Part shown: piece by piece, positions 4,096-64,000 of the stretch
Layout: each line of letters opens with the position of its first letter
Position numbering within the stretch: position 1 is the stretch's first letter
Source of the DNA: Octopus bimaculoides
Lineage: Eukaryota
DNA: 64,000 nucleotides
Direction: 5' to 3'
Assembly (NCBI RefSeq): GCF_001194135.2
Contig: NC_068992.1
Location: 10,777,833-10,841,832, forward strand
Notes under the pieces: model-generated
Database searches by the model: none
What the model was told of the DNA's origin: nothing
Seen by the model: the letters and a program-made list of their open reading frames with translations, nothing else
Position numbers and translations under genes: made by a program

Positions 4096-4576
4096 GTTGC
4101 TACTGTTGCTGCTACAACATTCTGTGCATTAGACAACAGCTGGCATCACTTACTTAACTTTTTGACTTAAATTCAAAGAATTCTGAAATAAAACAATCCA
4201 ACAATTAAACTCACAAAAGAATTCCAGTTGAACAATGGTAAAAATGAAACAAAAGAAGTCCACCTGAGGAAGGTGGAAAAAAAAACAAAGAACAAAACAG
4301 AACCAGATAAACAAAAATGAAAAAAAAAAAAGATATTGCCAAGGTACAATTCAGTTTTTAGTTGTTTTCCTCTTTTTATTTACAAAAATGATATTTATTT
4401 ATTTATATTTTTGTTGTTGTTGTTGTTGTTGTCATTCTTGGCATTGATATTTCAGATTCTTTTATTGGAACAAGTACATAGATAAATATTGAAAAGTCTT
4501 GATTTCTCTCGGCACACTTCTGCCAAGAAAAGGAAGAAGAAAGGAAAAAAACATGGTAAAATAAACATAAAATAAC

Positions 4577-9068: not shown

Positions 9069-9929
9069 CATATATGTAGATATATGTATATATATATATA
9101 TATATATATTTATACATACATATATATATATATATATAAACATATATCTATATATATATATGCATGTGTGTGTGTGTGTGTGTATGCACACACACACACA
9201 CACATACTCACACACGAATGTATATATATATATATATATATATATAAACACTGTGTATGTATTCAGGAATTTTTCTGTATTGAGGAAAACTTTGATTACA
9301 AAATAAGACAGGAAACTTCGGCTGATGTCTCTCCAACTCTTCTATGTTGCCTCATGACCATTCTACCTTTGTAATTCAAACCATGGCAGCGCTGACTATA
9401 AATATTTTGACTTGCTGCAACATTTCAATACTTTATTTCTCCCTCTAAATCTGAGATTGTTGGAAGTTATTGTAACTGTTTATTGATCATATAAAATAAT
9501 AATGCAACAGCATAACAACTCTAACAAACAAGTATGTACATCCTGGGAGCTTCTGGAAAATTCTAGAAACAATTTGTATTTTGTTTTTTTCCTTGTTTTT
9601 TTTTCTATTTTCGTTGTCATTGTTAAAAGCTGGTGATGACTGAGTTAGTTGATAAGGTGTCTGGATACCAGATGTTAAAAAGAAAAAGTTTCTTTGTACA
9701 TGTTGTCTCAGACAAAACATGAAATTGTGTTTATGAGACACTTATCTCTTTACGTGGCTTTGTCCCTCAAAACCTTAAATAAATGCCACATGGTTGAGAC
9801 AGTTAAATACATAATGGTCAGTGTTCCAAGCTGAATATTTTATTTAAATTGTAAAAAAAAAAAAAGAAAAAACAGAAAAGAAAAACGATGTCTTCATGCT
9901 ACAATAGTCAAATAGAATAAAAAAATAAT

Positions 9930-15403: not shown

Positions 15404-15615
15404 ACATCATCATCATCATCATAATCATCGTTTAGCATCTGTTTTCCATGCTAGCATGGGTTAGATGGTTTGACTGGAACTGGTGAGCCAGAGAGCAACA
15501 CCAGGAACCAGTCATCTGTTTTGGCATGGTTTCTATGGCTGAATACCCTTCTTAATGTCAACCATTGTACAGAGTGTACTGGGTGCCTTTTATTTGTCAC
15601 TGGCATGGGTACCTT
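15404..15615 (-). mobile_element. RTE 3' UTR copy
   Basis: (CAT)n, CCATGCTAGCATGG palindrome at 15446-15459 and shared body. Confidence 0.8.
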
Positions 15616-16894: not shown

Positions 16895-17360
16895 ATCATC
16901 ATCATCATACTTTAAAATCCACTTTTCATGCTGGCATGGGTTGGATGGTTTGACTGAAGACTTGCAAGCCAGGAGGCTGCACCAGGCTCCAATCTCATCT
17001 GACAAGGTTTTTACAGCTGGATGCCTTTCCTAACACCAACCACTCTGAGAGTGTAATGAGTGCTTTTTATGTGAGGGCCAGTCAGGCAGTACTGGCATCA
17101 ACCACATTCGAATGGTGATTTTTATGTGCCACCAGCATGGGTGCCAGTCAGGCGGTAGTTGCATCAGCCACAACAATGATTTCACTTGACTCAACAGGTC
17201 TTCTCAAGCACAGAATATCTCCAAAGGTCTCAGTCGCTTGTTATTGCCAACATTCGAAGGTTGTACTTCACCACCACATCCCAGGTCCTTCTGGGTCTAC
17301 CTCTTCCACAGATTCCTTCCACTGTTAGGGTGTGGCACTTTTCACACAGCTCTATTGCGT
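16895..17360 (-). mobile_element. RTE LINE 3' end (ORF2 terminus, 3' UTR and (GAT)n tail)
   Basis: CHTLTVEGICGRGRPRRTWDVVVKYNLRMLAITSD*, followed by the 3' UTR shared with other copies and a (GAT)n tail. Confidence 0.85.
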
Positions 17361-19814: not shown

Positions 19815-20135
19815 CCATACCTGCAAGTGCCAACCACTCTGAGAGTGTAGTGGGTGCTTTTTATGTGCCACCGGCACAGGGGCCAGAGGAGCTAGCATTG
19901 ACCTTGATCAGATGGTGCTTTTTACATGCCACCGGCATAGAAGCCATTCAAAGCAGCACTGGCATTGGCCACATTCAGATGGTGCTTTTTACGTGCTACT
20001 GGCACGGAGCTCACAACTACAATTTCCATTTGATTTGATTTTGATATTGCTGATGTTGATGTACTTGACTCAATAGGTCTCCTCAAGCACAGCATGTCTC
20101 CCTACGATCCAAGGTACTTTTGAGTGGGCTGGATA
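19815..20135 (-). mobile_element. RTE 3' UTR copy with internal repeats
   Basis: CAACCACTCTGAGAGTGTAGTGGGTGCTTTTTATGTGCCACC and repeated ATGGTGCTTTTTAC units; ends in the same GACTCAA..GGTCT..TCAAGCACAG junction as 17185-17215. Confidence 0.8.
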
Positions 20136-21364: not shown

Positions 21365-21975
21365 GTTTTATTTCAAGATTTCTTTCCAATAGAGAAAGAA
21401 ATCCGTATGTTGAAGATCTGTCATAGCTTGGATTGCTGGAAGCATTCAAGGTACTTGAAGTCACTGCAGTACAGTGTCCAAGTCTCACATGTCTAGAGAA
21501 GAGTTGGCAGGAGAATGGCATGGAAGACCATGATCTTTGTCTGGATGGTCAGCGCATGACTGAAGACTACACAGCTGAATCTACTGAAGGTGGAGTGGAT
21601 TGCTCTGATCTGGTGCTCCATGTCTTTTTCACAAGTGGGTATCTTTGAAAGGATACTCCCAGAGTATGAGAAGTGTTCAACTTCTTCTGGGGGTTGGCCG
21701 TTGATGCTAATGTTTGTAGGTGGACTGTTCTGGCCTGGTGCAGGTTGGATCAGGGTCTTGGTCTTTAATGTGTTTACCTGCATCCTGAAGCATTTGTAAG
21801 CCATGTTGTAAAGATTGGCTGTCTTTTGTAGGCCATCTGTGATCCGGTTCAAGGTGGCATTGTCATCAGCATACTGCATCTCACAGACTGAAATGGCGGA
21901 AGTCCTTGTCTTTGTGTCGAGACATGAGAGATTGAAGAGTCTGCCATCCAAGAGATAGTGCATGTTGATTGAAGG
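21365..21975 (-). mobile_element. RTE-clade LINE reverse transcriptase fragment (pseudogenised)
   Basis: ORF 21493-21993(-): DGRLFNL..EMQYADD..MQVNTLKTK..EEVEHFSYSGSILS..TIQTKIMVFHAILLPTLL* then TCETWTLY; YADD catalytic motif. Confidence 0.92.
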
Positions 21976-23583
21976 CAAGTCTAGTGCATGCATACATAAT
22001 AATATTTATGTATACATCCATGTATATATTGTGTAACAGAAAGAAGATATATCCCAATATATCCATCCTCATAAACTTGAAAAACCATAAAAGCTATCTG
22101 AATTTTAGAACTGAAATAGTTACTAGATGTATCTACAAAACAAATTTATTTTATTCAATAGGAAGACACCTCCTACACTATTTTCTTTACTTCCGAACAT
22201 ATTTGAAAATCTCACTCTATTTTTACACTAAACTCGTTCAATGCACATTGCACATAACATAGTTCCATACCTTGATCTGCTATCATCACAAGTAAATGCA
22301 TGGCCCTTCTGAGACTGACAAAACTGATGTTGGTTACATGCCCTTCATATTTAAGATAATGAATTGAGATGATGTTAATCTGTACAGAGATCATGCTTCT
22401 TTGCTTTTGAGGAGATAAGTCACACAACACCAATGAAGAATATTTTTGTGATCTTTTATCGCAGAATATGTGTAGCTATCTTGGTTGCATGAAGATGTGA
22501 CTTTGGCACATAGAATTAGGAATTGAAACTAATAAAAGCATAAGAGAGTATTACTTCATCACAGTTGTTGTGTAGTGTATTTGAGTATTCCATTTANNNN
22601 NNNNNNGACGTTAAACGATGATGATGATGATGATGAAGCAGGGTGCAAAAAATAGTTCGAGGAACGATACTTAAAAAGACTCATACCTAATTCAAAGAAA
22701 AATTTATTCTGCTATCATTTTGTGTCATGAAGCTGGAGCTAAGCAACCAACAAACCGTAAAATCTGCTGAGGGCCCGGAGGACATTTACAATTTTATGAC
22801 ATAATATGATTTGTAGATTATTTATAAAATGATTTTCAAATAAATAAGAGCCTTAGGAAGGTTTAACAAGCATTATTGTCAGAAATAGGGAACAAGTTAA
22901 TAAAAAGACAGTCTTTAGCAACATGAAAGGGGAGCAAAACGAATTTATATCAGATTTGTAAAGCAGAGTGCTTTCCTATTGATTTCTCTACGGGGAGAAT
23001 GGATGTAAACATTTTTAGTGAGGTAGTTGTGTTGTTATTACCTTTTTGAGGAATATTAACAGCCCAAGTGAAGTGTAAATTCTCCAGATTGAAATCAAAG
23101 CAAGCTGGGATTTATTTGGTTTTGTGTCAACCATGATTCAACACATGTATAATCAAAATGATCAAAAGCATTCCTGTTTGGATCATCTTATTTTTTATTC
23201 AAATCCATGCATTTCAAACTAGAATATTCAATGACTTGCCCTAACCTTTTTAAGGTTGTAGTGCATGTTTTGAAGGAAATTTTACTGCGATTTCAACCAT
23301 GTATAAAAGTTCGTTCCAATGCCTGAATTGCAAGTAGCTGGAGGATTGGGTTCACAAAGAACCATCTTCTAATGCAGTGAACTCACCAAATATTTATAAC
23401 TAAATTCAACAGGATTTTAAAAATTTAGAATTTGAAAAATTGACTGGATTGAAAAAATTAAGACGGTTCTCAAGGAATAGATCATAAGAATTTATTCCAA
23501 ATACGAAAGAAAATAGATTTTTTTAATATGAAATGGATATCTAAGGTAAGGATAATATATATATATGTATATANNNNNNNNNN

Positions 23584-26111: not shown

Positions 26112-26395
26112 TATGGAAGCATGTGGCTTAGTGGTTAGGGGTGTTGGACTCAACCAAAGCCCATCACATATATGTAAGTGTCTTCATGCTTGTGCTTGTT
26201 TCCCCAACCACTTAATAAACGGTGTTGGTTTGTTTACATCCCAGTAACATAGCAGTTTCACAAAAGAAACTGATAAAGTAAGTACCACACTTAAAATATT
26301 AGTACTAGGGTCAATCTGTTTTAACCAGACACGTCAAGACAGTGCCCCAGTAGGGTCGCAGTCCATTGACTGAAACAAGTAAAAAGAGGAAAATA
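26112..26395 (+). mobile_element. Internally deleted CORE-like SINE
   Basis: Head GCATGTGGCTTAGTGGTTAGGG joined to AAAGCCC; tail GTGCCCCAG..GACTGAAACAAGTAAAAAG. Confidence 0.7.
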
Positions 26396-33106: not shown

Positions 33107-33198
33107 CATATATATAATATATACATATATAATATATATTATATATATACACATACATACGTATATATACATATAATATATATATATTATATATTATT

Positions 33199-33383
33199 GC
33201 GGGTGACACGTAAAAGCACCCACTACACTCTCTGAGTGGTTGGCGTTAGGAAGGGCATCCAGCTGTAGAAACTCTGCCAAATCAGACTGGAGCCTGGTGT
33301 TGCCATCCGGTTTCACCAGTCCTCAGTCAAATCGTCCAACCCATGCTAGCATGGAAAGCGGACGTTAAGCGATGATGATGAAA
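33199..33383 (+). mobile_element. Young RTE 3' UTR copy
   Basis: ..CCATGCTAGCATGGAAAGCGGACGTTAAGCGATGATGATG; near-identical to 46359-46488(-). Confidence 0.88.
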
Positions 33384-33590
33384 NNNNNNNNNNNNNNNNN
33401 NNNNNNNNNNNNNNNNNNNNNNNNNNNNNNNNNNNNNNNNNNNNNNNNNNNNNNNNNNNNNNNNNNNNNNNNNNNNNNNNNNNNNNNNNNNNNNNNNNNN
33501 NNNNNNNNNNNNNNNNNNNNNNNNNNNNNNNNNNNNNNNNNNNNNNNNNNNNNNNNNNNNNNNNNNNNNNNNNNNNNNNNNNNNNNNNNN

Positions 33591-33630
<40 letters not shown>

Positions 33631-34308
33631 CATACTGACATTCATACACACACACATATATATATAATATATATATATGTATATATGTATGTGTGTGTAT
33701 ATATATGTATATACATATATATGTAGAGAGAGAGAGAGGTAGACAAACAGACAGAGAGGGAAAGAGAGAGGAAGGATGTGAAGTAGGGAGAATGAGTGAA
33801 AGAAGAAAAGGAGAGAGGAAGCGAGAGGAATTCACTTTGTATTCAAATCTTTTCAGGGAATTTTGGGGGATTTCTGTCTTTACTGATCCAAGAATATTGA
33901 TTTTTGTTTTATTGAATTTCTTTCGAAGTGTGATTCACATGAATGGAGATTCTGATTAGATTTTCTGGTTCCATTTTCTTGGAACTGGTTTCATTTTCTT
34001 TCTCTGTAGATGCATGAAGACGTCGTCTCACACACTTGCAGGGTACACATTCTACCGTGTGCATTCCTTTATCTCCCCGCTCCCACCACCGTCCATCCAT
34101 GCTGTCTCCACTGCCACTGCTGCCACCACCACCTCTGCTGCAGCCATCCACCACCACCACCAATGATACCACTGACTGAACAACACTACCAATACTAGAA
34201 GTCTAATGGAAAGTCGATGCTTGATGGGTTCATTCCCTTCCTCTCTGCCTCTTTCTCTCCTCCTCCTCCTCCTCATCATCATCATCATCATTATTGTTGT
34301 TGTTATTG

Positions 34309-34319
<11 letters not shown>

Positions 34320-34340
<21 letters not shown>

Positions 34341-34447
34341 GTCGTTGTTAGTGTCATCATCATCATCATCATCATCGTCGTTGTTAGTGTCATCATCATC
34401 ATCATCATCATCGTCGTTGTTAGTGTCATCATCATCATCATCATCAT
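34320..34447. repeat. 36-bp higher-order unit x3 built on (CAT)n
   Basis: GTCGTTGTTAGTGT at 34341, 34377 and 34413, separated by (CAT)7. Confidence 0.9.
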
Positions 34448-34886
34448 TAATCTTCATCGTTGCCATTTTCGTCCTCTTGACCATCGTCCATATACACTTA
34501 TTTCTCCTCTTCCTCCTCCTCCTCAACATCATCATCAGCATTATCATTATCCCCTTCATTTCATGACCACTTTCCATGCTGGTAGTATGGGTCAGAGGAG
34601 TTGTTCTTCTTTGGAGCTATAGCTCTCTATGATGTGTCAGAGGCCTAAGTCTCTCCCACGCATTTCATTTTGAGCATGTTTTCTATGACAACATTCTCTT
34701 CCTAATCCTAACTACTTTACAGAGAGTATATATCCTAAACATGCTACCACAAGTCTTGCATTTAAAGATATTTGGAATCCAAACTATAAATCAAGATAGG
34801 AGTGGTGTTGATGAACAGAAGATCAAATGCAAAAGGATAGATTGGTCATTTTTGATTGAATAATATAATAAAATAAAAACATACAC

Positions 34887-35169: not shown

Positions 35170-35569
35170 NNNNNNNNNNNNNNNNNNNNNNNNNNNNNNN
35201 NNNNNNNNNNNNNNNNNNNNNNNNNNNNNNNNNNNNNNNNNNNNNNNNNNNNNNNNNNNNNNNNNNNNNNNNNNNNNNNNNNNNNNNNNNNNNNNNNNNN
35301 NNNNNNNNNNNNNNNNNNNNNNNNNNNNNNNNNNNNNNNNNNNNNNNNNNNNNNNNNNNNNNNNNNNNNNNNNNNNNNNNNNNNNNNNNNNNNNNNNNNN
35401 NNNNNNNNNNNNTATATATATATATATATATATATATATCATCATCATCATCATCATCACCAGGGAGAGGGAACAGCAATCATCTGTGAAGATGGAGCAA
35501 TCACCATGTAAGTATGTATGTATATATGTATGTGTGTGTGTGTGTTTGTGTATATGCATTGGGATGTAT

Positions 35570-36164: not shown

Positions 36165-36530
36165 ATATTTATTCGTTTCTTTTATTCGTTTCAGTCATTT
36201 GACTGCACTCATGATGGAGCACCACCTTTAGTTGACTGATACTTATTCAATCAGTCTCTTTTGCTGAAATGCAAAGTTATGGGGATGTAAATACACCAAC
36301 ATCGGTTGTCAAGCAATGATGGGGGGACAAACACAGAAACACACATATCTGACGGGTTTCTTTCAGTTTCCATCTACCAAATCTATTCACAAGACTTTGG
36401 TCGACCCGAGGCTATAGTAGAAGACACTTGCCCAAGATGCCATGCTGTGGGACTGAACTTGGAACCATGTAGTTGGTAAGCAAGCCGCTCATCACACACC
36501 CGCTCCTGCACCCATATATATATACGAATA
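36165..36530 (-). mobile_element. Long CORE-like SINE copy
   Basis: TTTCAGTCATTTGACTGC..GGAGCACCACC..TTTCAGTTTCCATCTACCAAATC..GAGGCTATAGTAGAAGACACTTGCCCAAG. Confidence 0.85.
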
Positions 36531-37905: not shown

Positions 37906-38730
37906 TTAACCTTTCAGCATTTAAACTGGCCATGTCCAGCCCAAATATTCTACCCATTTTATTTTCAAAGTGGCCAGATCAGCACTTTCACACCTATCCT
38001 ACAATGTCAAAGAAGCTTGCTCCCTAACTACATAGTTCTGAATTCAGTCCCACTGCATGGCATCTTGGACAAGTGTCTTTTTCTACAGCCTCAGGTCAAC
38101 CAAAACCTTGTGAGTGGATTTGGTGGATGGAAACTGAAAGAAGCCTGTCATATATATGTCATATATAATATTAAAAAACTGCAATGGTCTTATTCTCCAC
38201 TTGATTAATGGTGGAATAAATTATTATTATGACCAGGAAATCCTGGGTAGCTGCATTTAATAAGATTTGTAGTTTTTTATTATAAGATTATCTTTACTCT
38301 CTTAGTTGATCAAATGCTTTTCTACTTGAAGTATTACCGCACAATTATATGTCTATGTACACACATGTGTGTGTGTGTGTGTGTATGTGCGTGTGTATGT
38401 GTGTGTGTGTTTGCTCCTCTCCCACTGCTTGATAAGCAGTGTTGGTGTGTTTATGTCTCTGTAACTTAACAGTTCAACAAAAGAGTACAATAAATTAAGT
38501 ACCTGAATTTTAAAAAAATAGGTAGTAGGGTTGATTTAATCGAGTAAAATTCTTCAAGGTGGTGCCCCAGCATGGCCATAGTTTAATGACTGAAACAAGT
38601 AAAAGTTAAAAGATATATGAATCATGACTTCGAAATCTCAAAGTTACAAGATAATACAGGATTAACTTTAAAGAATGTGAATAAAAACTGCATTATTTTT
38701 GACAAAGTAATCTGAATGCTAAAGGGTTAA
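37906..38730. mobile_element. piggyBac-type non-autonomous element (TTAA..TTAA)
   Basis: Left end TTAA-CCTTTCAGCATT (37906), right end AATGCTAAAGGG-TTAA (38730); imperfect inverted termini; interrupted by a SINE. Confidence 0.72.
38010..38615 (+). mobile_element. CORE-like SINE nested in a piggyBac-type MITE, with an AT-rich interior
   Basis: AAGAAGCTTGC..TTCAGTCCCACTGCATGGCATCTTGGACAAGTGTC..; tail GGTGCCCCAGCATGGCC..GACTGAAACAAGTAAAAG. Confidence 0.75.
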
Positions 38731-39614
38731 ACAGAGATTTGTTCAATTGAGACTGATCTGGAATTTAAACAACAGTAATAAAGAAACACTGTAGAGAAAA
38801 AATTATTGTAGTGTTGTGTTGTATCCACAGTTCAACTCTAAAATCTCATTCAGAAAAACAAGCAAAGACTAAGGAGTGAAAGTGCAGACAAGTATGGGAA
38901 AAAATGCCTGAGGAACCGAACATTGATAAGGTCACAAGGTGTGATTAAAGGACTTTTGACAAAGCAATTAACTAATTAATTGATTAATTGGTTTGTCAAA
39001 GTTTAATTAAATTGGTTGGTTAAAGTCTAATTAAATAATTAGTTAACTGGTAATAAATCAGAAATGAACTACAATTACTAGTAATATTTTATTGGAAAGA
39101 AAAAAATAAGCAATCCCCAGAAGTCCACCAATATTTGATTCAACTCATAATGCCATATCAACAATTGAGTAAAACACTCAAAAATGAATTGCTTTCTTTT
39201 AAATATGTTTTTTTTAATTATGGATGATAGCAAGGAACATTTTCCACTATGGCCATCCAGAATGTGTGTGCAAAAGTATTTATGAGTATTTGAATGAGAA
39301 CATGTAAATCAAGTTTTATGAATGCATAAATGTGTGTAAATTTTCATGGCATATGTACATATATGTGAGTGTGTGGTGTGTGCGTATATACAGGTATGTA
39401 TGAATGTAAGTGCTTATATGACAGACACACACATACATATATATGTATATATATGCACAAGGAGCCATGTTAGTGTTGATATGTAGTTTTGATTCAAGTT
39501 GGAGTTAGCTCATGATTTTTCAGTTAATTGTTTAAATAATATTTCGTTTTGGGATTTGGTTTAACAGGATGTGTTTAAATAAATGTCACTTTAAATCAGA
39601 GCATATATATTATA

Positions 39615-40257: not shown

Positions 40258-40672
40258 AAGGTACCGGCATGGCAGTGTAGTAAGAACTTTGCTTCTCAGT
40301 CATATGTTCTTGCATTCACTCCCAATGCATGGTACCTCTGGCAAATGCCTCCTGCTATAGCATCAAGCTGATCATAACCTTGCAAGTAGATTTAGTAGAT
40401 GGAAACTAAAAGAAGCCCATTGTATATATCTATATGTATATATATATAGAAATATATGTGTGTGTGTGTGTGTGTGTATCTTTGTCACCAATACTTGAAA
40501 ACTGGCATTGTTTTTTTTACGTCCCCATAACAGCAGTTTGGCAAAAGAAACCAAAAAATAAACCAGATTTTAAAAAATAAACTGGGATTGATTCATTCGA
40601 CCGAAACAAATCCTTTCAAGGTGGTGCCCCAGCATGGCTACAATCCAATCCTGAAACAAATAAAAGATAAAA
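40258..40672 (+). mobile_element. Long CORE-like SINE with internal (TA)/(TG) tract
   Basis: Head GTGTAGTAAGAACTTTGCTTC; TGGCAAATGCCTCCTGCTATAGC; GATGGAAACTAAAAGAAGCCC; tail GGTGCCCCAGCATGGC..CTGAAACAA. Confidence 0.8.
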
Positions 40673-41249
40673 AATAAGTCAGATTATAGTTGTTAAGCAT
40701 GTATGCATTTATCTGGGTGTGAATGCATACTGTGAATGTTACAGCATGCATAATTCTAATATAAACACATGACTGTATCCTCTACATTCATTTGTGTATA
40801 TGTATGTGTAAATGCTTTGCCTGTGGGTGTGCATGCCTGTATGTATGTGTCATGTATGCATAAGTAATTTACTACACTAGTTGCAGTGTAAACCTGAATC
40901 TTACAGGATCTAAGGATAATAAATTTGCGTTAAAACTAAAATTAATTCTATTTTCTTTAAAAGAACAAAAAGTGCTTCCTGCATGAAGTAGCCACAGCAA
41001 GAACAATTCTAAATTGTAGGATATGTATAATCTTCAACATGCAGGCAAAGTGCTGATGTGCCTTCAATTTTCTGGATATGTTGCAATCTATTATGCAACT
41101 GTTGGCAAAATTGATACCAAAATGCTTCAAACATTGTAACAATTGGCAGATTCTCTAATAATAGGCATATTCACTCAACAGGCTCATTGAGTTCTCACTT
41201 TTTAAAAATCTGTGCTATCTCAGCCAAATAACTACTTCAGTTCAGTATA

Positions 41250-43461: not shown

Positions 43462-43660
43462 TTCTATTCTTTTACTTATTTCAGTCATTTTACTGTGGCC
43501 ATGTTGTAGCACCACCTTTAGTCAAACAAATTGACCCCAGGACCTATTCTTTGTAAACCTAGTACTTATTCTGTCGGTCTGTTGTGCCAAACCACTAAGT
43601 TACAGGGATGTAAACACACCAACATCAGTTGTCAAGCAATGGTGGGACAACAAACATAAA
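43462..43660 (-). mobile_element. CORE-like SINE 3' half
   Basis: TTTCAGTCATTTTACTGTGGCCATGTTGTAGCACCACC..GGATGTAAACACACCAACATCAGTTGTCAAGCAATGGTGGG. Confidence 0.82.
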
Positions 43661-43670
43661 CACAAACACA

Positions 43671-43716
<46 letters not shown>

Positions 43717-45893: not shown

Positions 45894-46325
45894 GCATGTG
45901 TGTAAATGTATATTCATATATATATATATNNNNNNNNNNNNNNNNNNNNNNNNNNNNNNNNNNNNNNNNNNNNNNNNNNNNNNNNNNNNNNNNNNNNNNN
46001 NNNNNNNNNNNNNNNNNNNNNNNNNNNNNNNNNNNNNNNNNNNNNNNNNNNNNNNNNNNNNNNNNNNNNNNNNNNNNNNNNNNNNNNNNNNNNNNNNNNN
46101 NNNNNNNNNNNNNNNNNNNNNNNNNNNNNNNNNNNNNNNNNNNNNNNNNNNNNNNNNNNNNNNNNNNNNNNNNNNNNNNNNNNNNNNNNNNNNNNNNNNN
46201 NNNNNNNNNNNNNNNNNNNNNNNNNNNNNNNNNNNNNNNNNNNNNNNNNNNNNNNNNNNNNNNNNNNNNNNNNNNNNNNNNNNNNNNNNNNNNNNNNNNN
46301 NNNNNNNNNNNNNNNNNNNNNNNNN

Positions 46326-46362: not shown

Positions 46363-46488
46363 TCATCATCATCATCATCGTTTAACGTCCGCTTTCCATG
46401 CTAGCATGGGTTGGACGATTTGACTGAGGACTGGTGAAACCGGATGGCAACACCAGGCTCCAGTCTAATTTGGCAGAGTTTCTACAGC
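46359..46488 (-). mobile_element. Young, strongly 5'-truncated RTE 3' UTR copy inside (TA)n
   Basis: (CAT)n-CGTTTAACGTCCGCTTTCCATGCTAGCATGG..TTTCTACAGCT; (TA)n on both sides. Confidence 0.88.
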
Positions 46489-47003
46489 TATATATATATA
46501 TATATATGCTGGTGTATACATATATATACATGTACACACACACAGATGTATGCATACACATATGTACATGCATTCATTTATTTCTTCATTTGCTTATCCA
46601 GTTTTTCCATGTTAGCATGAAATAGATAATTCTATTATCGACACCTTCTTTCACAGCCTGATTTCACTTCTTTCCATAATCCTTACCAGTTTTTCCAGGA
46701 AGCGATCTCTTATCACCCTTGCCTTCAAATGCATGTAGGGAGCTGATGGTTCTTTGACAGAAGGAATAACAACAGCCCTCGTAACTCACAACCATTCCAA
46801 AGCACAAATATAAGCAAACACTCAGTGTGTTTCTTTTACCGAATCTATTGACAAGGCTTTTGTTGGGTGAGGTTGTGTAGCAGAAACTTGCTCAAGATGT
46901 TGTGCAGTAGGATTGAATCTGAAACCATGTGACTAGCAAGCAGACTTCTTAACCACACACCTATGTCTCTCTCTCTCTTTTTCTCTGACTGTCTATCACT
47001 CTC

Positions 47004-52539: not shown

Positions 52540-52949
52540 NNNNNNNNNNNNNNNNNNNNNNNNNNNNNNNNNNNNNNNNNNNNNNNNNNNNNNNNNNNNN
52601 NNNNNNNNNNNNNNNNNNNNNNNNNNNNNNNNNNNNNNNNNNNNNNNNNNNNNNNNNNNNNNNNNNNNNNNNNNNNNNNNNNNNNNNNNNNNNNNNNNNN
52701 NNNNNNNNNNNNNNNNNNNNNNNNNNNNNNNNNNNNNNNNNNNNNNNNNNNNNNNNNNNNNNNNNNNNNNNNNNNNNNNNNNNNNNNNNNNNNNNNNNNN
52801 NNNNNNNNNNNNNNNNNNNNNNNNNNNNNNNNNNNNNNNNNNNNNNNNNNNNNNNNNNNNNNNNNNNNNNNNNNNNNNNNNNNNNNNNNNNNNNNNNNNN
52901 NNNNNNNNNNNNNNNNNNNNNNNNNNNNNNNNNNNNNNNNNNNNNNNNN

Positions 52950-53001
<52 letters not shown>

Positions 53002-54114
53002 TATCATCATTGTTTTAACATTCACCTTTCCATGCTTGCAATGGTCGACATAATTTGTTGAAGCAGATATTCTACAACTAGATTCTCTGCCTGATACAAA
53101 TCCTCATTTGTTTCCCAGCAAAGAAATATTTCCCATGGTCCTTCAAGCAAAAACAGCACAATGGCTGAACATCTTTCCATGGAAGATTACAAGTAGGAAG
53201 GCAACATTTCTTAATAAAAGCCCATGATGTCAGGATGAGGAGATATGAACATGTATACACACACATACAGTATAGATGAATAATTCCAAATTTTGCTTCA
53301 CAGCCACAAAGTCTTGATTTCCATTGCACAGCATGACATCTTTGGTCAACTACCATTTTCGATTGGCTCAGGGTGATCAAAATCTTGTGAATGAAACTGG
53401 GTTAACAAAAACTGTATAGAAGACCACCAAGTGAATTGTACCGATAATTCTAACAGACACAGCTTGTTGTACATTGTGTCACACCGTCTGAGAAATATAT
53501 ATGTGTGTGTGTATATATATATATATATAATTCTTTCACATGTTTTAGCCCTAGCAACACAAACACACACATATTTATACACATATACACATATATGTAT
53601 ATATGTATATGCATAAGTATACAGATGCATATACATGTACATAAACATATATATANNNNNNNNNNNNNNNNNNNNNNNNNNNNNNNNNNNNNNNNNNNNN
53701 NNNNNNNNNNNNNNNNNNNNNNNNNNNNNNNNNNNNNNNNNNNNNNNNNNNNNNNNNNNNNNNNNNNNNNNNNNNNNNNNNNNNNNNNNNNNNNNNNNNN
53801 NNNNNNNNNNNNNNNNNNNNNNNNNNNNNNNNNNNNNNNNNNNNNNNNNNNNNNNNNNNNNNNNNNNNNNNNNNNNNNNNNNNNNNNNNNNNNNNNNNNN
53901 NNNNNNNNNNNNNNNNNNNNNNNNNNNNNNNNNNNNNNNNNNNNNNNNNNNNNNNNNNNNNNNNNNNNNNNNNNNNNNNNNNNNNNNNNNNNNNNNNNNN
54001 NNNNNNNNNNNNNNNNNNNNNNNNNNNNNNNNNNNNNNNNNNNNNNNNNNNNNNNNNNAACTATCAATGGCTGATAGTTAGCAAGGTGAGACACACATAA
54101 GAAAGAAGGAAACA

Positions 54115-54161
54115 AAGGACCACTGATGAGGTCACAGAAGTGTGACGAAAGAACTCTGGCC
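54115..54161 (+). ncRNA. Minimal type I hammerhead ribozyme motif, probably from a Penelope-like element pseudo-LTR
   Basis: CCA(54120-22) CTGATGA(54123-29) G GTCACA-GAAG-TGTGAC (perfect 6-bp stem II) GAAA(54147-50) G-AA-C TC | TGG(54157-59); stem I CCA/TGG; predicted cleavage after C54156. Confidence 0.75.
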
Positions 54162-54330
54162 GAAATAAGATTAAGATTAAGATTAATGTAATATAAAGCT
54201 GAAAAAAAAAATAATAAATAACACCAAATATACAGTGCGTGTGTTTTTATTGGCTAAACTGGCAATATGACCATCCCCAAGTACAACAACATCTGTTTCA
54301 ACACACGATTTCACATAAAAAATCTTGCAA

Positions 54331-54367
<37 letters not shown>

Positions 54368-55108
54368 CCAAATGATGAAAGAAAGATATCTATATAACTA
54401 TTTCTACATCTGTATCCATTTATTTACGTATTTATATATATCTGTATACCTGTTGACATGTATTTATATGTATATGGATGCACACACACACACACACACT
54501 CACTTATATGAATAAATACGTAAACATGTAATTATGCCTATCTCTGCGTATGATAGAGATTATTGGAAATATATAATTGAAATTCATTTAATTTTTCCTG
54601 AGTCTTTCAGAAAAATAAAGTAATTTTCGCTGTTTTGTATTGGTTTCAATTATAAACCTGATAAATATTTCCAATAAATGTCTTTATTCATGTGCAAACC
54701 AATCATATTTAAATCATTTACGAATATATTAAGTGGAGCAAGACATTCTTCACGTTCTTTGTGTGAAAAGACATCTTAATATGCATAATAATAACAATAA
54801 TAACAGCAACAAAACCACCACCACCAACAACAACAATAATAATGTTTTCTGAATGGATGGTGGTAACAGCAACATTTTGTTTATTGGCCACAAGGGTTCA
54901 CAGAGATACAAAAAGGATATGAAACTTTTTCTACTTGTTACAAAGAAAGAAAAGATAATTTGTCGTGCGAAAAAGAAACATTTACAAATTACCAGAGATG
55001 GGGTTAAGAGATGTCAAAATGTAAATGGAAGGAAGTAGTAAGAATTTTAAAAGTGTACTCACATTTATACACCAATGGATTTGGAATCATACATATATAT
55101 ATATATAA

Positions 55109-55182: not shown

Positions 55183-55493
55183 GCACTTGTGTCGGTGGCA
55201 CGTGAAAAGACATTCGAGCGAGATCGTTGCCAGTGCTGCTGGACTGGCTCCTGTGCAGGTGGCACGTAAAATACACCATTTTGAGCATGGCCATTGCCAG
55301 TACCACCTGACTGGCCTTCGTGCCGGTGGCACGTAAAAGCACCCACTACACTCTCGGAGTGGTTGGCGTTAGGAAGGGCATCCAGCTGTAGAAACTCTGC
55401 CAAATCAGATTGGAGCCTGGTGTAGCCATCTGGATCACCAGTCCTCAGTCAAATCGTCCAACCCATGCTAGCATGGAAAGTAGACGTTAAACA
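55183..55493 (+). mobile_element. RTE 3' UTR copy with three internal GGTGGCACGT-headed repeats
   Basis: GGTGGCACGT(G/A)AAA recurs at ~55195, ~55258 and ~55326; palindrome at 55463-55476. Confidence 0.87.
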
Positions 55494-55511
55494 ATGGATA
55501 GATGCACATAT

Positions 55512-57575: not shown

Positions 57576-60469
57576 NNNNNNNNNNNNNNNNNNNNNNNNN
57601 NNNNNNNNNNNNNNNNNNNNNNNNNNNNNNNNNNNNNNNNNNNNNNNNNNNNNNNNNNNNNNNNNNNNNNNNNNNNNNNNNNNNNNNNNNNNNNNNNNNN
57701 NNNNNNNNNNNNNNNNNNNNNNNNNNNNNNNNNNNNNNNNNNNNNNNNNNNNNNNNNNNNNNNNNNNNNNNNNNNNNNNNNNNNNNNNNAATATCATAAG
57801 ATAAAGATAATAAAATGAATACACGTGTTTCATAACTAATTTTCAAATAGAAAGAAAATTTAAATCGATTAAAATCAATAAAAACTATCGAAAATCAATT
57901 CTATTAAAAAATATAGCTAATCTTCAGGTCAAAATACAATAATAATAATAATAATAATAATAATATTAATAATAATAATAATATTAATAATAAATGAATG
58001 TATATATCAACCAACAATAAATAACAAATGAATTTATATAAAAATATTAAAAATATCAAAATAATAAACATTCCATAATCAACCCTACGTCCACTATAAT
58101 ATATGCTAACAGGTATATTATATACAAAAACCGAATTAAACAAATTTATTATACACACACCCATATATATACATATATACTAAAATACGCACACTCATAA
58201 ATAAACATATATCCATACATATACACATACCCATATGTATATACAAAAAAGCCAACATATACATACATATACACATAAAAATACACAGACTGTAAAACAC
58301 TCACATATATAAATAAATAAAAAAAAGGAATAGTATAAACAAATACACAATCAGTAACGCCCTCAGACATATTATATATATATATATACTCACATGTATA
58401 CACACAAATATATACAGAAACACATATATATATAAATATAAATACATACGTATACATATATACATACACACAAATATAAATATACATACAAACACATATA
58501 GACTAAAACACACACACTCACATGTATACATATACACATACATATGCATATATATAAAGTATCTAAAATATTAATATCAGCAAAGTAGTTTATGGCTATA
58601 TTTAATTTGCCGTTCGTTAAAAGAATTGATTAATGTATCTGAATGTTTATATCAGTAATGTAGTTTATGACTATATTTAATTTGGCGTTCGTGAAACGAA
58701 TTGAATAATGTATCTGAAATGTTTATATCAGTGAAGTAGTTTTTGTCTACATTTAATTTGCCGTTCATGAAAAGAATTGAGTAATGTATCTGAAATGTTT
58801 GTATCAGTGAAGTAGTTTTTGTCTACATTTAATTTGCCATTCGTCAAAAGCATTGAGTAATGTATCTGAAATATATATAACAGTAAAGTAGTTTATGTCT
58901 ACATTTAATTTGCCGTTCCTGAAACAAATTGAGTAATTTATCTGAAATGTTTATATCAGTAAAGTAGTTTATGTCTACATTTAATTAGCCTTTCGTGAAA
59001 GGAACTGAGAGTTGTTTATGTCTACATTTAATTTGCCGTTCGTGAAAGGAATTGGGTAATGTATCTAAATTGTTTATATCAGTAAAGTTGTTTATGTCTA
59101 CATTTAATTTGCCGTTCGTGAAAGGAATTGAGTAATGTATCTGGGATGTTTATATTAGTAAAGTTGTTTATGTCCACATTTAATTAGCCGTTCGTGAAAG
59201 GAATTGAGTAATGTAACTGGAATATTTATAACAGTAAAGTAGTTTATGTATACATTTAATTTGCTGTTCGTGAAAAGAATTAAGTAAAGCATCTAAAATA
59301 TTAACATTAGTAAAGTAGTTTATGTCTACATTTATTTTGCCGTTCGTGAAACGTNNNNNNNNNNNNNNNNNNNNNNNNNNNNNNNNNNNNNNNNNNNNNN
59401 NNNNNNNNNNNNNNNNNNNNNNNNNNNNNNNNAAATGTTTGTATCAGTGAAGTAGTTTTTGTCTACATTTAATTTGCCATTCGTCAAAAGCATTGAGTAA
59501 TGTATCTGAAATATATATAACAGTAAAGTAGTTTATGTCTACATTTAATTTGCCGTTCCTGAAACAAATTGAGTAATTTATCTGAAATGTTTATATCAGT
59601 AAAGTAGTTTATGTCTACATTTAATTAGCCTTTCGTGAAAGGAACTGAGAGTTGTTTATGTCTACATTTAATTTGCCGTTCGTGAAAGGAATTGAGTAAT
59701 GTATCTGGGATGTTTATATTAGTAAAGTTGTTTATGTCCACATTTAATTAGCCGTTCGTGAAAGGAATTGAGTAATGTAACTGGAATATTTATAACAGTA
59801 AAGTAGTTTATGTATACATTTAATTTGCTGTTCGTGAAAAGAATTAAGTAAAGCATCTAAAATATTAACATTAGTAAAGTAGTTTATGTCTACATTTATT
59901 TTGCCGTTCGTGAAACGTATTTAGTAATGTGTCTGAATGTTTATATCAATAAAGTAGTTTATGTATACATTTAATTTGCCGTTTGTGAAAACAGTTGGGT
60001 AATGTATCTAAATTATCTATATTAGTAAAGTTGTTTATGTATACATTTAATTTGCCGTTCGTGAAAGGTATTGAGTAATGTATCTGGATGTTTATAGTAG
60101 TAAAGTTGTTTATGTCTACATTTAATTTGCCGTTCATGAAAGGAATTGAGTAATGTATCTGGGATGTTAATAGTAGTAAAGTTGTTTATGTCTACATTTA
60201 ATTTGCCGTTCGTGAAAGGAATTGAGTAATGTATCTGGGATGTTTATAGTAGTAAAGTTGTTTATGTCAACATTTAATTTGCTGCTCGTGAAAAGAATTA
60301 CGTAAAGTATCTAAAATATTAATATTAGTAAAGTAGTTTGTCTACATTTATTTTGCCGTTCGTGAAAGAAATTTAGTAATGTCTGAATGTTTATATCAGT
60401 AAAGTAATTTATGTATACATCTAATTTGCCGTTTTTGAAAAGAACTGGGTAATGTATCTAAATTATATA

Positions 60470-60518
60470 CCAGCATGGCCGCAGTCAAATGACTGAAACA
60501 AGTAAAAGAGTAAAAGAG
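60470..60518 (+). mobile_element. 5'-truncated SINE 3' tail inserted in a satellite monomer
   Basis: CCAGCATGGCCGCAGTCAAATGACTGAAACAAGTAAAAGAGTAAAAGAG matches the SINE tails at ~26345-26390, ~38565-38612 and ~40625-40670, and interrupts an otherwise normal monomer. Confidence 0.88.
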
Positions 60519-61228
60519 TATTAGTAAAGTTGTTTATGTCTACATTTAATTTGCCGTTCGTGAAAAGAATTGAGTAATGTATCTTAATGGTTCTATTAGT
60601 AAATTTGGTTATGACTACATTTAATTTGCAGTTCATGAAAAGAATTGAGTAATGTATCTGAAATGTTTATATCAGTGAAGTAGTTTACGTATACATTTAA
60701 TTTGCCGTTCGTGAAACGAATTTAGTAATTTGTCTGAATGTTTATATCAGTAAAGTTGTTTATTTATACATTTAATTTGCCGTTTGTGAAAAGAAATGGG
60801 TAATGTATATGGGATGTTTATATTAGTAAAGTTGTTTATGTCTACAATTTATTTGCCGTTCGTGAAAGGAGATGAGTAATGTATCTGAGATGTTTATATT
60901 AGTAAAGTTGTTTATGTCTACATTTAATTTGCCGTTCGTGAACAAAATTGAGTAATGTATCTGGAATATTTATAACAGTAAAGTAGTTTATGTCTACATT
61001 TACTTTACTGATATAAACATTCAGACATTTAATTAGCCGTTCGTGAAAGGAATTGAGAGTTGTTTATGTCTACATTTAATTTGCCGTTCGTGAAAGGAAT
61101 TGGGTAATGTATCTAAATTGTTTATATCAGTAAATTTGTTTATGTCTACATTTAATTTGCCGTTCATGAAAGGAATTGAGTAATGTATCTGGGATGTTTA
61201 TATTAGTAAAGTTGTTTATGTCTACATT

Positions 61229-63022
61229 TACTTTACTGATATAAACATTCAGACACATTACTAAATTAGACATATTACTAAATTTCTTTCACGAACGGCA
61301 AATTAAATGTAGACAAACTACTTTACTAATATTAAAATATTAGATACTTTACTTAATTCTTTTCACGAACAGCAAATTAAATGTATACATAAACTAATTT
61401 ACTGTTATAAATATTCCAGATGCATTACTCATCTGCTTTCACGAACGGCAAATTTAATGTAGACATAAACAACTTTACTACACTATTAACATCCCAGATA
61501 CATTACTCAATTCCTTTCATGAATGGCAAATTAAATGTATACATAAACTACTTTACTGTTACAAATATTCCAGATACATTACTCATCTGCTTTCACGAAC
61601 GGCACATTTAATGTAGACATAAACAACTTTACTACACTACTATTAACATCCCAGATACATTACTCAATTCCTTTCATGAATGGCAAATTAAATGTATACA
61701 AACTACTTTACTGATATAAACTTCCAGATACATTACTCAATTCCTTTCACGAACGGCAATTTAAATGTAGACATAAACAACTTTACTAATATAAACAATT
61801 TAGATACATTACCCAATTCTTGTCGCGAACGGCAAATTAAATGTATACAAACTACTTTACTGATATAAACAGTCAGACACATCATTCAATTCCTTTCACG
61901 AACGGCAAATTAAATGTAGGCATAAACAACTTTACTAATATAAACATCCCAGATACATTACCCAATTCTATTCAGAACCGGAAAATGAATGTATACATAA
62001 ACTACTTTACTGATATAAACATTCAGACACGTTACAAAATTCGTTTCACGAACGGCAAATTAAATGTAGACATAAACTACTTTACTAATGTTAATATTTT
62101 AGATACTTTACTTAATTCTTTTCACGAACAGCAAATTAAATGTAGACATAAACAACGTCACTAATATAAACTTCCCAGATACAGTACTCAGTTCGATACA
62201 TTACTCAATTCCTTTCACGAACGGCAAATTAAATNNNNNNNNNNNNNNNNNNNNNNNNNNNNNNNNNNNNNNNNNNNNNNNNNNNNNNNNNNNNNNNNNN
62301 NNNNNNNNNNNNNNNNNNNNNNNNNNNNNNNNNNATTAAATGTAGACATAAACAACTTTACTAATATAAACATCCCAGATACATCACTCATTTACTTTCA
62401 CGAATGGCAAATTAAATGTAAACATAAACAACTTTACTACTATAAACATCCCAGATACATTACTCAATTCCTTTCAGGGACGGCAAATTAAATGTAGACA
62501 TAAACAACTTTACTGATATAAACGTCCAAGATACATTACCCAATTCTTTTCAGAAACGGCAAATTAAATGAATACATAAACTATTTTACTGATATAAACA
62601 TTCAGACACATTACAAAATTCGTTTCACGAACGGCAAATTAAATGTAGACATAAACTACTTTACTAATGTTAATATTTTAGATACTTTACTTAATTCTTT
62701 TCACGAATAGCGAATTAAATGTATACATAAACTACTTTAATGTTATAAATATTCCAGTTACATTACTCAATTCCTTTCACGAACGGCAAATTAAATGTAG
62801 ACATAAACAACTTTACTAATATAAATACTAATATAAACATCCCAGATACATTACTCAATTCCTTTCACGAACGGCAAATTAAATGCAGACATAAACAACT
62901 TTACTAATGTATATAATTTAGATACGTTACCCAAAAACGGCAAATTAAATTTATACAAACTAATTTACTGATATAAACATCCAGATACATTACTTAATTA
63001 CTTTTAGGAACGGCAAATTAAA
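61229..63022 (-). repeat. Inverted block of the 76-bp satellite
   Basis: Monomers read as the reverse complement (TTCACGAACGGCAAATTAAATGTAGACATAAAC) between 61229 and ~63022, and forward on both sides. Confidence 0.93.
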
Positions 63023-64000
63023 TTGAGTAATGTATCTTAATGGTTCTATTAGTAAATTTGTTTATGACTACATTTAATTTGCCGTTTATGAAAAGAATTG
63101 GGTAATGTATCTGAAATGTTTATATCAGTGAAGTAGTTTACGTATTACATTTAATTTGCCGTTCGTGAAACGAATTTAGTAATTTGTCTGAATGTTTATA
63201 TCAGTAAAGTAGTTTATTTATACATTTAATTTGCCGTTCGTGAAAGGAATTGAGTGTTGTTTATGTCTACATTTAATTTGCCGTTCGTGAAAGTAATCGG
63301 GTAATGTATCTAAATTGTTTATATCAGTAAATTTGTTTATGTCTACATTTAATTTGCTGTTCGTGAAAGCAATTGAGTAATGTATCTGGGATGTTTATAT
63401 TAGTAAAGCTGTTTATGTCTACATTTAATTAGCCGTTCGTGAAAGGAATTGAGTAATGTAACTGGAATATTTATAACAGTAAAATAGTTTATGTATACAT
63501 TTAATTTGCCGTTTCTGAATAGAATTGGGTAATGTATCTGGAATGTTTATATTACTAAAGTTGTTTATGTCTACATTTAATTTGCCGTTCGTGAAAGGAA
63601 TTGAGTAATGTATCTGGGATGTTTATAGTAGTAAAGTTGTTTATGTCTACATTTAATTTGCCGTTCGTGAAAGGAGATGAGTAATGTATCTGGGATATTT
63701 ATATTAGTAAAGTTGTTTATGTCTACATTTAATTTGCCGTTCGTGAAAGGAATTGAGTACAGTATCTGGGATGTTTATAGTAGTAAAGTTGTTTATGTCT
63801 ACATTTAATTTGCCGTTCGTGAAATAAATTGAGTAATGTATCTGGAATATTTATAACAGTAAAGTAGTTTATGTATACATTTAATTTGCCGTTCGTGAAA
63901 GAAATTGAGTAATGTATCTGGAATATTTATAACAGTAAAGTAGTTTATGTATACATTTAATTTGCTGTTCGTGAAAAGAATCAAGTAAAGTATCTAAAAT

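What the first reader, a model, noticed from the sequence alone, without database searches (positions are those of the whole stretch)
54115..54185. Minimal hammerhead ribozyme with an intact catalytic core in otherwise anonymous DNA
Seen: CCA-CTGATGA-G-[GTCACA GAAG TGTGAC]-GAAA-G-AA-C-TC|TGG. It has the full CUGAUGA and GAAA boxes, a perfect 6-bp stem II with a tetraloop, one extra G after the core, a 3-bp stem I (extendable as GG(A)CCA/TGGCC), and a stem III of only 2 bp (A-U, G-C) closed by AA. An (AAGATT)3 tail follows. Known: minimal type I hammerheads with a very short stem III occur in the pseudo-LTRs of Penelope-like retroelements and are thought to cleave as dimers. Inference: this is the end of a Penelope-like or retrozyme-like element whose body, or a second ribozyme copy, may lie in the gap at 53656-54058. 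This is the best candidate for an unannotated functional RNA in the window.
Basis: partly seen in the sequence, partly recalled or inferred. Interest (0 to 1): 0.85.

Follow-up and report, generated by a model that had tools for sequence, protein, structure and literature searches.

The report
Decayed Penelope-type minimal hammerhead ribozyme copy
The hammerhead ribozyme motif is really there and is unlikely to be chance, but it looks like an ordinary worn-down leftover of a Penelope-like jumping gene in an octopus-type genome, a class described in 2014, not a new functional RNA.

Summary
The motif is exactly as described at 54117-54161 (+). It has CUGAUGA, one bulged G, a perfect 6-bp helix II with a GAAG loop, GAAA, a tiny helix III, C17 and a 3(+2)-bp open helix I. 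A motif of this quality is expected about 1e-4 times per window by chance. That is still about 5 times in a 2.7-Gb genome.

It mirrors the experimentally active Poseidon_Ac hammerhead. One feature fails: loop 3 (AA) is not palindromic, and folding predicts no stable helix III as monomer or dimer.

A second, decayed copy lies 15 kb upstream at 38857-39176 (+). It shares the ribozyme and about 170 nt downstream, so this is a dispersed repeat.

Against a stronger claim:
- Rfam gives no hammerhead hit.
- The window holds no PLE reverse transcriptase or endonuclease ORF.
- The visible sequence holds no tandem partner.
- The gap contents cannot be tested.

The host looks like an octopus-like cephalopod, where Penelope elements are abundant.

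Verdict: a new member of a known kind, probably an inactive relic. Interest is low.

The parts
54117..54161 (+). Minimal type-I hammerhead motif (copy A): helix I GG(A)CCA/UGGCC, CUGAUGA, bulged G, helix II, GAAA, helix III remnant, C17
   Evidence: Read directly. It is the only descriptor hit in the window, against 0 in 40 Mb of random sequence. The MFE fold equals helices I+II.
54123..54129 (+). Core box C3-A9 (CUGAUGA)
54130..54130 (+). Unpaired G between A9 and G10.1, a hallmark of PLE minimal hammerheads
   Evidence: the feature is described in PMC4209133.
54131..54146 (+). Helix II: GUCACA/UGUGAC, 6 Watson-Crick pairs beginning with G10.1-C11.1, loop GAAG
54147..54156 (+). GAAA box (G12-A15.1), then G15.2, AA, C16.2, U16.1 and C17. 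The predicted scissile bond is after 54156. AGAACU is not self-complementary.
   Evidence: Closing helix III as a monomer costs +5.7 kcal/mol. The double hammerhead is -22.4 against -25.2 kcal/mol for two monomers.
54126..54191 (+). Short ORF (MRSQKCDERTLAEIRLRLRLM*) starting at the AUG inside CUGAUGA. It is in the same frame relative to the core as the Poseidon_Ac ORF start, and is cut off after 21 codons.
   Evidence: Read and compared with the Poseidon_Ac consensus and text. No database protein shares it.
54059..54334 (+). Repeat copy A: the visible extent of the element, from the gap edge to the (AT)15 array
   Evidence: Collinear alignment to 38857-39176, 78% identity over ungapped columns. 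Best of 1372 real-sequence windows, z=7.7. The 3' flank alone also ranks the copy-B region first, z=5.2.
38857..39176 (+). Repeat copy B, decayed. Its hammerhead remnant at 38923-38958 reads UUGAUAA G GUCACA AGG UGUGAU UAAA GGAC UU. It has U3/A8 instead of C3/G8, and G12->U, which should be inactivating.
   Evidence: (blastn E=0.014).
54166..54186 (+). (TAAGAT)3.5 microsatellite inside the element. Copy B has a TTAAT-rich palindromic stretch at the matching place.
54336..54366 (.). (AT)15 array directly after the end of A/B homology; a possible insertion target
   Evidence: This is weak evidence: 13% of window positions have such an array within 250 nt downstream.
53656..54058 (.). Assembly gap 61 nt upstream of the motif. 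It hides the 5' part of copy A.
   Evidence: The left edge lies in an (ACATAT)n run.

Best explanation
Positions 54059-54334 are the 3'-terminal (pseudo-LTR) part of an old retroelement of the Penelope-like kind. It is either a 5'-truncated PLE or a solo pLTR-derived non-autonomous copy, and it carries that family's minimal type-I hammerhead.

In an active element, the ribozyme lies at the junction of tandem units and overlaps the start of the RT-endonuclease ORF. Two ribozymes of a tandem transcript are thought to pair through helices I and III into a double hammerhead. This cuts after C17 and releases unit-length RNA.

This copy keeps an intact catalytic core and helix II. However, it is solitary and its ORF is closed after 21 codons. 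Its helix III segment (AGAACU) cannot form a continuous duplex with a partner.

It is therefore most likely a non-functional relic, not a working RNA gene.

Shown: the motif, its rarity, its architecture, the second copy, and the absence of a PLE ORF. Inferred: PLE origin, the cleavage mechanism and inactivity.
For: 1. The motif is exact and unique in the window, with 0 hits in 40 Mb of random sequence.
2. It meets the features that Cervera & de la Pena give as arguing against a random origin of PLE minimal hammerheads. [quoted passage not shown] It also has a long helix II (6 bp) and a short open helix I. My analytic estimate with these features required is about 6e-12 per position, or about 0.03 expected in a 2.7-Gb genome.
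3. It has the same build as the experimentally cleaving Poseidon_Ac hammerhead: CCU CUGAGGA U GCCUGC...GUGGGC GAAA CG UC AGG. The reading frame from an AUG at the core is also the same.
4. A second, diverged copy in the same orientation shares the ribozyme and about 170 nt downstream. This means a dispersed repeat. Divergence is about 22%.
5. The host appears to be an octopus-like cephalopod. Published repeat annotations of octopus genomes list Penelope among the abundant families, with an expansion at Jukes-Cantor distance 0.2.
6. Most genomic minimal hammerheads are reported as single motifs from truncated PLEs.
Against: - No RT or GIY-YIG remnant is found anywhere in the window, so the link to a PLE rests on architecture and literature.
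- There is no Rfam hammerhead hit even at E<=10.
- Loop 3 (AA) is not palindromic, unlike published PLE motifs.
- The A/B homology is modest: blastn E=0.014, nhmmer E=0.04. The 5' flank alone is not significant.
- Genome-wide copy number could not be measured because no eukaryotic DNA collection was available.
- No database protein starts with the ribozyme-encoded peptide.
Confidence: 0.7

Rival explanations
1. It is the last unit of a tandem array of hammerhead-bearing short repeats (a non-LTR retrozyme) that collapsed into the gap. The array would be transcribed, self-cleaved as dimers and circularised, so this would be a live non-autonomous element.
For: - The gap starts 61 nt upstream, and tandem repeats do break short-read assemblies.
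- A 2026 preprint derives animal retrozymes from PLE pLTRs, with varying proportions of monomers.
- The catalytic core is intact.
Against: - Retrozyme hammerheads are canonical type I: helix I of 6 bp with loop 1, helix II of 4 bp and loop-loop contacts. This one is the minimal PLE type.
- No tandem copy is visible next to A or B.
- The left gap edge is an (ACATAT)n microsatellite, not a repeat unit. Many other gaps here abut (TA)n.
- Copy B is solitary and dead.
- The helix III segment cannot form a clean dimer helix.
Confidence: 0.14
2. It is a chance match to the hammerhead consensus in AT-rich non-coding DNA, with no evolutionary relation to ribozymes.
For: - About 5 motifs of this basic quality are expected by chance in a genome of this size (analytic estimate; for the descriptor).
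- Rfam is silent.
- The fold z-score is only -1.68.
- With 3 core mismatches allowed, about 90 hammerhead-like sites occur in the window.
Against: - It carries extra PLE-specific features that were not part of any search.
- A second copy shares helix II sequence and a collinear 3' flank.
- The expected count with all features required is about 0.03 per genome.
Confidence: 0.07
3. It belongs to a different hammerhead-carrying element, such as a SINE-like pol III retroposon of the schistosome Sm-alpha type, or it is a host-domesticated ribozyme.
For: - The window is full of SINE copies.
- The A/B homology visible so far begins close to the ribozyme.
Against: - No tRNA-like head is found (ARAGORN gives 0 genes).
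- Sm-alpha hammerheads are canonical, not minimal.
- No exon or gene context is visible.
- Copy B is decayed, which argues against purifying selection.
Confidence: 0.06

Closest known systems
Minimal hammerhead ribozymes of metazoan Penelope-like elements (Cervera & de la Pena 2014, PMC4209133)
   Same: Type I topology, an open and short helix I, and an unpaired nucleotide between A9 and G10.1. It also has a G10.1-C11.1 pair, a 6-bp helix II, a rudimentary helix III with complementary 15.2/16.2, and C17. It occurs as a solitary dispersed copy.
   Different: The two loop-3 nucleotides (AA) are not palindromic, so the dimeric helix III would carry two A.A mismatches. No flanking RT-GIY-YIG ORF is visible.
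Poseidon_Ac hammerhead of Anolis carolinensis (Frangieh et al. 2024, PMC11167929), shown to cleave in vitro
   Same: Nearly the same build: a 3-bp helix I starting CC, a CUGANGA box, a 1-nt bulge, a 6-bp helix II, GAAA, a tiny helix III and UC at 16.1/17. An AUG at the core opens a frame in which GAA of the GAAA box is a codon.
   Different: There is no primary-sequence similarity outside the core (MAFFT misaligns them). Poseidon_Ac has ACGU with no loop 3, and its ORF runs on for 846 codons. Here the ORF stops after 21 codons.
Non-LTR retrozymes of animals (Cervera & de la Pena 2020, PMC7229834)
   Same: A hammerhead within AT-rich non-coding repeat DNA; possibly PLE-derived according to a 2026 preprint.
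   Different: Retrozymes are tandem repeats of about 170-400 bp with canonical hammerheads and loop-loop contacts. Here the copies are solitary and the ribozyme is of the minimal type.

Membership tests
Hammerhead ribozyme (any type) | Conserved core: CUGANGA, GAAA and a non-G residue at position 17 | tested here: met
   CUGAUGA 54123-54129, GAAA 54147-54150, C17 54156.
Hammerhead ribozyme (any type) | Three helices around the core | tested here: inconclusive
   Helices I (3+2 bp) and II (6 bp) form in the MFE fold. Helix III is A-U plus G-C around a 2-nt loop, which is sterically implausible. Closing it costs +5.7 kcal/mol as a monomer.
Hammerhead ribozyme (any type) | Match to curated covariance models (Rfam hammerhead families) | tested here: not met
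   No hit at gathering score over the window. No hammerhead hit at E<=10 over 54059-54400. I could not check whether these models detect validated PLE minimal hammerheads, so the weight of this negative is limited.
Hammerhead ribozyme (any type) | Site-specific self-cleavage | not testable with these tools
   This needs in vitro transcription of monomer and dimer constructs.
PLE minimal hammerhead | [quoted passage not shown] | tested here: met
   G54130; the feature is listed.
PLE minimal hammerhead | G10.1-C11.1 pair and a longer-than-canonical helix II (6-8 bp) | tested here: met
   G54131-C54146; 6 Watson-Crick pairs.
PLE minimal hammerhead | Short open helix I without a defined loop 1 | tested here: met
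   CCA/UGG, extendable to GG(A)CCA/UGGCC.
PLE minimal hammerhead | Palindromic positions 15.2-16.2, and palindromic loop 3 when present, allowing a dimeric helix III | tested here: not met
   G15.2/C16.2 are complementary, but loop AA is not palindromic. AGAACU:AGAACU has two A.A mismatches. The double hammerhead is -22.4 against -25.2 kcal/mol for two monomers. Copy B has AGGACU, also not palindromic.
PLE minimal hammerhead | Location in a pseudo-LTR next to an RT-GIY-YIG ORF | tested here: not met
   tblastn of Poseidon_Ac against the window gives nothing below E=1.4. No GIY-YIG motif is found. Upstream DNA is in the gap. The literature says most genomic copies are solitary, so this weakens the case but does not exclude it.
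PLE minimal hammerhead | Membership of a multi-copy consensus family with compensatory changes | tested here: inconclusive
   One further copy is in the window. Its helix II is kept through a G-C to G.U change. The genome-wide census is not possible with these tools.
Non-LTR retrozyme | Head-to-tail tandem repeats of about 170-400 bp, each with a hammerhead | tested here: not met
   No tandem copy in visible sequence. The 403-N gap is untestable.
Non-LTR retrozyme | Canonical type I hammerhead: helix I of 6 bp with loop 1, helix II of 4 bp, loop-loop contacts | tested here: not met
   Helix I is open and 3-5 bp; helix II is 6 bp.
Sm-alpha-type hammerhead SINE | tRNA-like pol III head upstream of the ribozyme | tested here: not met
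   ARAGORN finds 0 genes in the window. The upstream part of copy A is in the gap.

The most novel reading that the evidence does not exclude
The two copies represent a cephalopod-specific, non-autonomous hammerhead-bearing retroelement family. Its helix III is not self-complementary in either copy (AGRACU). Its ribozyme would therefore be activated in some way other than the symmetric dimer proposed for PLE and newt hammerheads, for example a protein chaperone, a heterodimer with another family, or cleavage with helix III unformed.
Probability: 0.07. Interest if true: 0.45.

Novelty: new member of a known kind. Interest (0 to 1): 0.2.

Why it matters
It adds an example of a Penelope-type minimal hammerhead in what appears to be an octopus genome. 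I found no paper describing hammerheads in that lineage. It also shows that such motifs can be recognised from raw sequence when Rfam is silent. The practical lesson is that Rfam-based annotation can miss a motif of this class. Biologically it is ordinary. Minimal hammerheads are reported in their thousands in many animal genomes, mostly as solitary relics with weak or no activity. This copy shows several signs of decay.

Tried and rejected
- Rfam at gathering score on the whole window and at E<=10 on 54059-54400 gave no hammerhead hits, only AT-repeat miRNA noise.
- Exact-pattern scans for CTGATGAGGTCAC-N(3-9)-GTGACGAAA in JGI metagenome contigs and IMG/VR gave 0 hits. These collections do not hold animal genomes, so this says nothing about copy number.
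- A protein search with the in-frame translation across the ribozyme (stops masked) found no candidate.
- A relaxed-core scan with up to 3 mismatches gave about 90 sites in the window. Copy B's motif-likeness alone is therefore not significant. Its link to A rests on sequence similarity.
- A 22-nt partial match at 4501-4522 (-) lacks the CUGAUGA box, so I treated it as chance.
- A TTGATAA...TAAA site at 9649 shares only a 9-mer with B, so I did not count it.
- Under strict scoring, the flanks do not pick out copy B. Under gapped scoring, the 3' flank does.
- MAFFT could not align the Poseidon_Ac junction to A, so that comparison was made by eye on structure.
- Lunse et al. 2017 (PMC5785218) is not held. 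The supplements of PMC4209133 are not held.
- I ran no further search on Poseidon_Ac. Its hits would probably be dominated by vertebrates, with a low chance of yielding an octopus element of the same family.

Full report
**Observation.** The motif is present exactly as described.
- Helix I 5' strand is GG(A)CCA at 54117-54122.
- CUGAUGA is at 54123-54129, followed by an unpaired G at 54130.
- Helix II is GUCACA/UGUGAC at 54131-54136 and 54141-54146, with a GAAG loop.
- GAAA is at 54147-54150. G15.2 is 54151, AA follows, then C16.2 at 54154, U16.1 at 54155 and C17 at 54156.
- Helix I 3' strand is UGGCC at 54157-54161.
- (TAAGAT)3.5 follows at 54166-54186. A 403-N gap ends 61 nt upstream.

**Chance.**
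- A relaxed type-I descriptor finds only this site on either strand of the window. It finds nothing in 40 Mb of composition-matched first-order Markov sequence.
- From the window's base composition, I estimate about 1e-9 per position for a motif with a 6-bp Watson-Crick helix II. That gives about 1.2e-4 expected per window, but about 5 in a 2.7-Gb genome.
- The bare motif is therefore convincing at window scale only.
- Requiring the extra features below lowers the estimate to about 6e-12 per position, or about 0.03 per genome. Those features were defined in the literature independently of this sequence.

**Curated models.**
- Rfam gives no hit at gathering score in the window. It gives no hammerhead hit even at E<=10 in 54059-54400.
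- The motif departs from the canonical type-I layout of a 6-bp helix I with loop 1 and a 4-bp helix II. That may explain the miss.
- I could not test whether these models detect validated PLE hammerheads.
- The negative lowers confidence a little but is not decisive.

**Host.**
- The window is a eukaryotic draft: GC 32.6%, CpG observed/expected 0.38, 16 gaps and dense (TA)n/(CA)n arrays.
- A LINE-type RT fragment at 21496-22005 (-) is 70% identical to a hypothetical protein of Octopus vulgaris. The host is therefore probably an octopus-like cephalopod.
- Published repeat annotations list Penelope among the abundant retroelement families of octopuses, with an expansion at Jukes-Cantor distance 0.2.

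**Architecture compared with the literature.**
- Cervera & de la Pena (PMC4209133) describe metazoan PLE minimal hammerheads as follows:
  - a larger helix II;
[quoted passage not shown] - a conserved G10.1-C11.1 pair;
  - palindromic 15.2-16.2 and loop 3.
- Copy A meets all of these except the last. G15.2 and C16.2 are complementary, but the AA loop is not palindromic.
- The Poseidon_Ac consensus (supplement of PMC11167929) lets the validated ribozyme be read at the unit junction: CCU CUGAGGA U GCCUGC-CAUAGAU-GUGGGC GAAA CG UC AGG.
- That is the same build as copy A: CCA CUGAUGA G GUCACA-GAAG-UGUGAC GAAA GAAC UC UGG.
- In Poseidon_Ac the ORF starts at A9-bulge-G10.1, and GAA of the GAAA box is a codon.
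- In copy A, the AUG at A6-G8 opens the same frame relative to the core, but it stops after 21 codons at 54189-54191. The frame match alone has a one-in-three chance.

**A second copy.**
- blastn of the region against the window finds 38918-38954 (+) at 79% identity over 38 nt, E=0.014.
- That site reads UUGAUAA G GUCACA AGG UGUGAU UAAA GGAC UU.
- Helix II is kept, with G-C changed to G.U.
- C3/G8 have become U3/A8. This is a pair that the 2014 paper reports as a natural covariation.
- G12 is U. From general hammerhead knowledge, that should abolish catalysis.
- With gapped local alignment and an empirical null of 1372 real windows from both strands, full-length A scores best against the copy-B region (113 against a mean of 37.2, sd 9.8).
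- The 3' flank alone (54162-54335, ribozyme excluded) also ranks the copy-B region first (78 against a mean of 34.3, sd 8.4).
- The 58-nt 5' flank is not significant by itself. Under stricter scoring, the flanks do not stand out.
- The collinear alignment runs from 54059 to 54334 and from 38857 to 39176, with 78% identity over ungapped columns and many gaps.
- I take A and B as two old copies of one dispersed repeat, with moderate confidence.
- Homology ends one base before an (AT)15 array at 54336. This fits the (TA)n target preference reported for some PLE clades. However, 13% of window positions would show the same by chance.

**What is absent.**
- tblastn of the 846-aa Poseidon_Ac protein against the window gives nothing below E=1.4.
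- No GIY-YIG signature occurs in any frame, and the only YxDD in an RT-like context is the LINE fragment near 21.9 kb.
- No tandem copy of the unit is visible near A or B.
- No tRNA-like head is found.
- Copy B lies directly 3' of a SINE copy (about 38384-38615) that has relatives elsewhere in the window.

**Folding.**
- The MFE of 54117-54166 is the helix I plus helix II fold (-12.6 kcal/mol).
- Adding the A15.1-U16.1 pair costs 5.7 kcal/mol.
- The symmetric double hammerhead evaluates at -22.4 kcal/mol, against -25.2 for two monomers and -29.6 for the dimer MFE, which is a different structure.
- This copy is therefore not predicted to form helix III either way. Published PLE hammerheads already cleave poorly in vitro, even as dimers.

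**Interpretation.**
- The best-supported reading is a relic of the terminal, pseudo-LTR part of a Penelope-like retroelement, or of a pLTR-derived non-autonomous copy. It carries the family's minimal hammerhead.
- The mechanism in active elements is taken from the literature and was not tested here. The ribozyme lies at the unit junction of tandem copies and overlaps the ORF start. Two ribozymes pair into a double hammerhead and cut after C17.
- Frangieh et al. found that cleavage is not needed for insertion in vitro, and that reverse transcription starts 111-118 nt into the ORF. That would explain why genomic copies run past the ribozyme, as A and B do.
- This copy is probably inactive. It is solitary, its ORF is closed, its helix III is non-palindromic and its only relative in the window is dead.

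- By analogy with Poseidon_Ac, where the ribozyme sits at the unit junction and ORF start, a body belonging to this copy would lie upstream, in or beyond the gap. The nominal gap of 403 nt is too small for about 3 kb, though gap sizes are estimates.
- The gap's left edge is an (ACATAT)n run, and many other gaps here abut (TA)n. Microsatellite is therefore the simpler content.
- A hidden second ribozyme cannot be excluded.

**Novelty.**
- I found no paper on hammerheads in octopus.
- This is a new member of a known kind and of low interest.

Noticed in passing
window 58555-64000: There is a large satellite with a unit of about 76 nt (spacings of 76 and 123 nt). It is present in blocks of both orientations: 62335-62825 is inverted relative to 58555-61002 and 63259-63961, at 85-94% complementarity.
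   Followed up: no
window 38384-38615; also 43469-43698 (-), 40455-40676, 26191-26384, 36179-36343 (-): These are copies of a SINE-like dispersed repeat at about 70-75% identity. A second repeat family is seen at 55230-55500, 33198-33374, 16911-17149 (-), 46376-46489 (-), 15426-15605 (-) and 19829-19964 (-).
   Followed up: partly
window 21496-22005 (-): This is a LINE-type reverse transcriptase fragment (YADD), 70% identical to a hypothetical protein of Octopus vulgaris. It was the basis for placing the window in an octopus-like cephalopod.
   Followed up: partly
window gaps, e.g. 1146-1662, 33384-33590, 35170-35412, 45930-46325, 52540-52949, 57576-57789: Many assembly gaps are bordered on one or both sides by (TA)n arrays. 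Microsatellites, not hidden elements, therefore seem to be the usual cause of gaps in this window.
   Followed up: partly
window 38955-39000: A 46-nt near-palindrome (87% self-complementary, TTAAT-rich) lies just 3' of the decayed ribozyme in copy B. Copy A has (TAAGAT)3.5 at the matching place.
   Followed up: no
window 54059-54079: A perfect 8-bp hairpin (AACTATCA-ATGGC-TGATAGTT) lies immediately after the gap and 44 nt upstream of the ribozyme. It is not conserved in copy B.
   Followed up: no
window 9649-9690 (+): TTGATAA G GTGTCTGG-ATA-CCAGATGT TAAA is another hammerhead-like site with U3/A8 and U12, as in copy B. It has a different helix II and shares only a 9-mer with B. It may be chance or a relic of another family.
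   Followed up: partly
window 34050-34620: A long ATG/ATC-type trinucleotide array with imperfect 24-codon periodicity gives poly-M, poly-D and poly-I ORFs in several frames.
   Followed up: no
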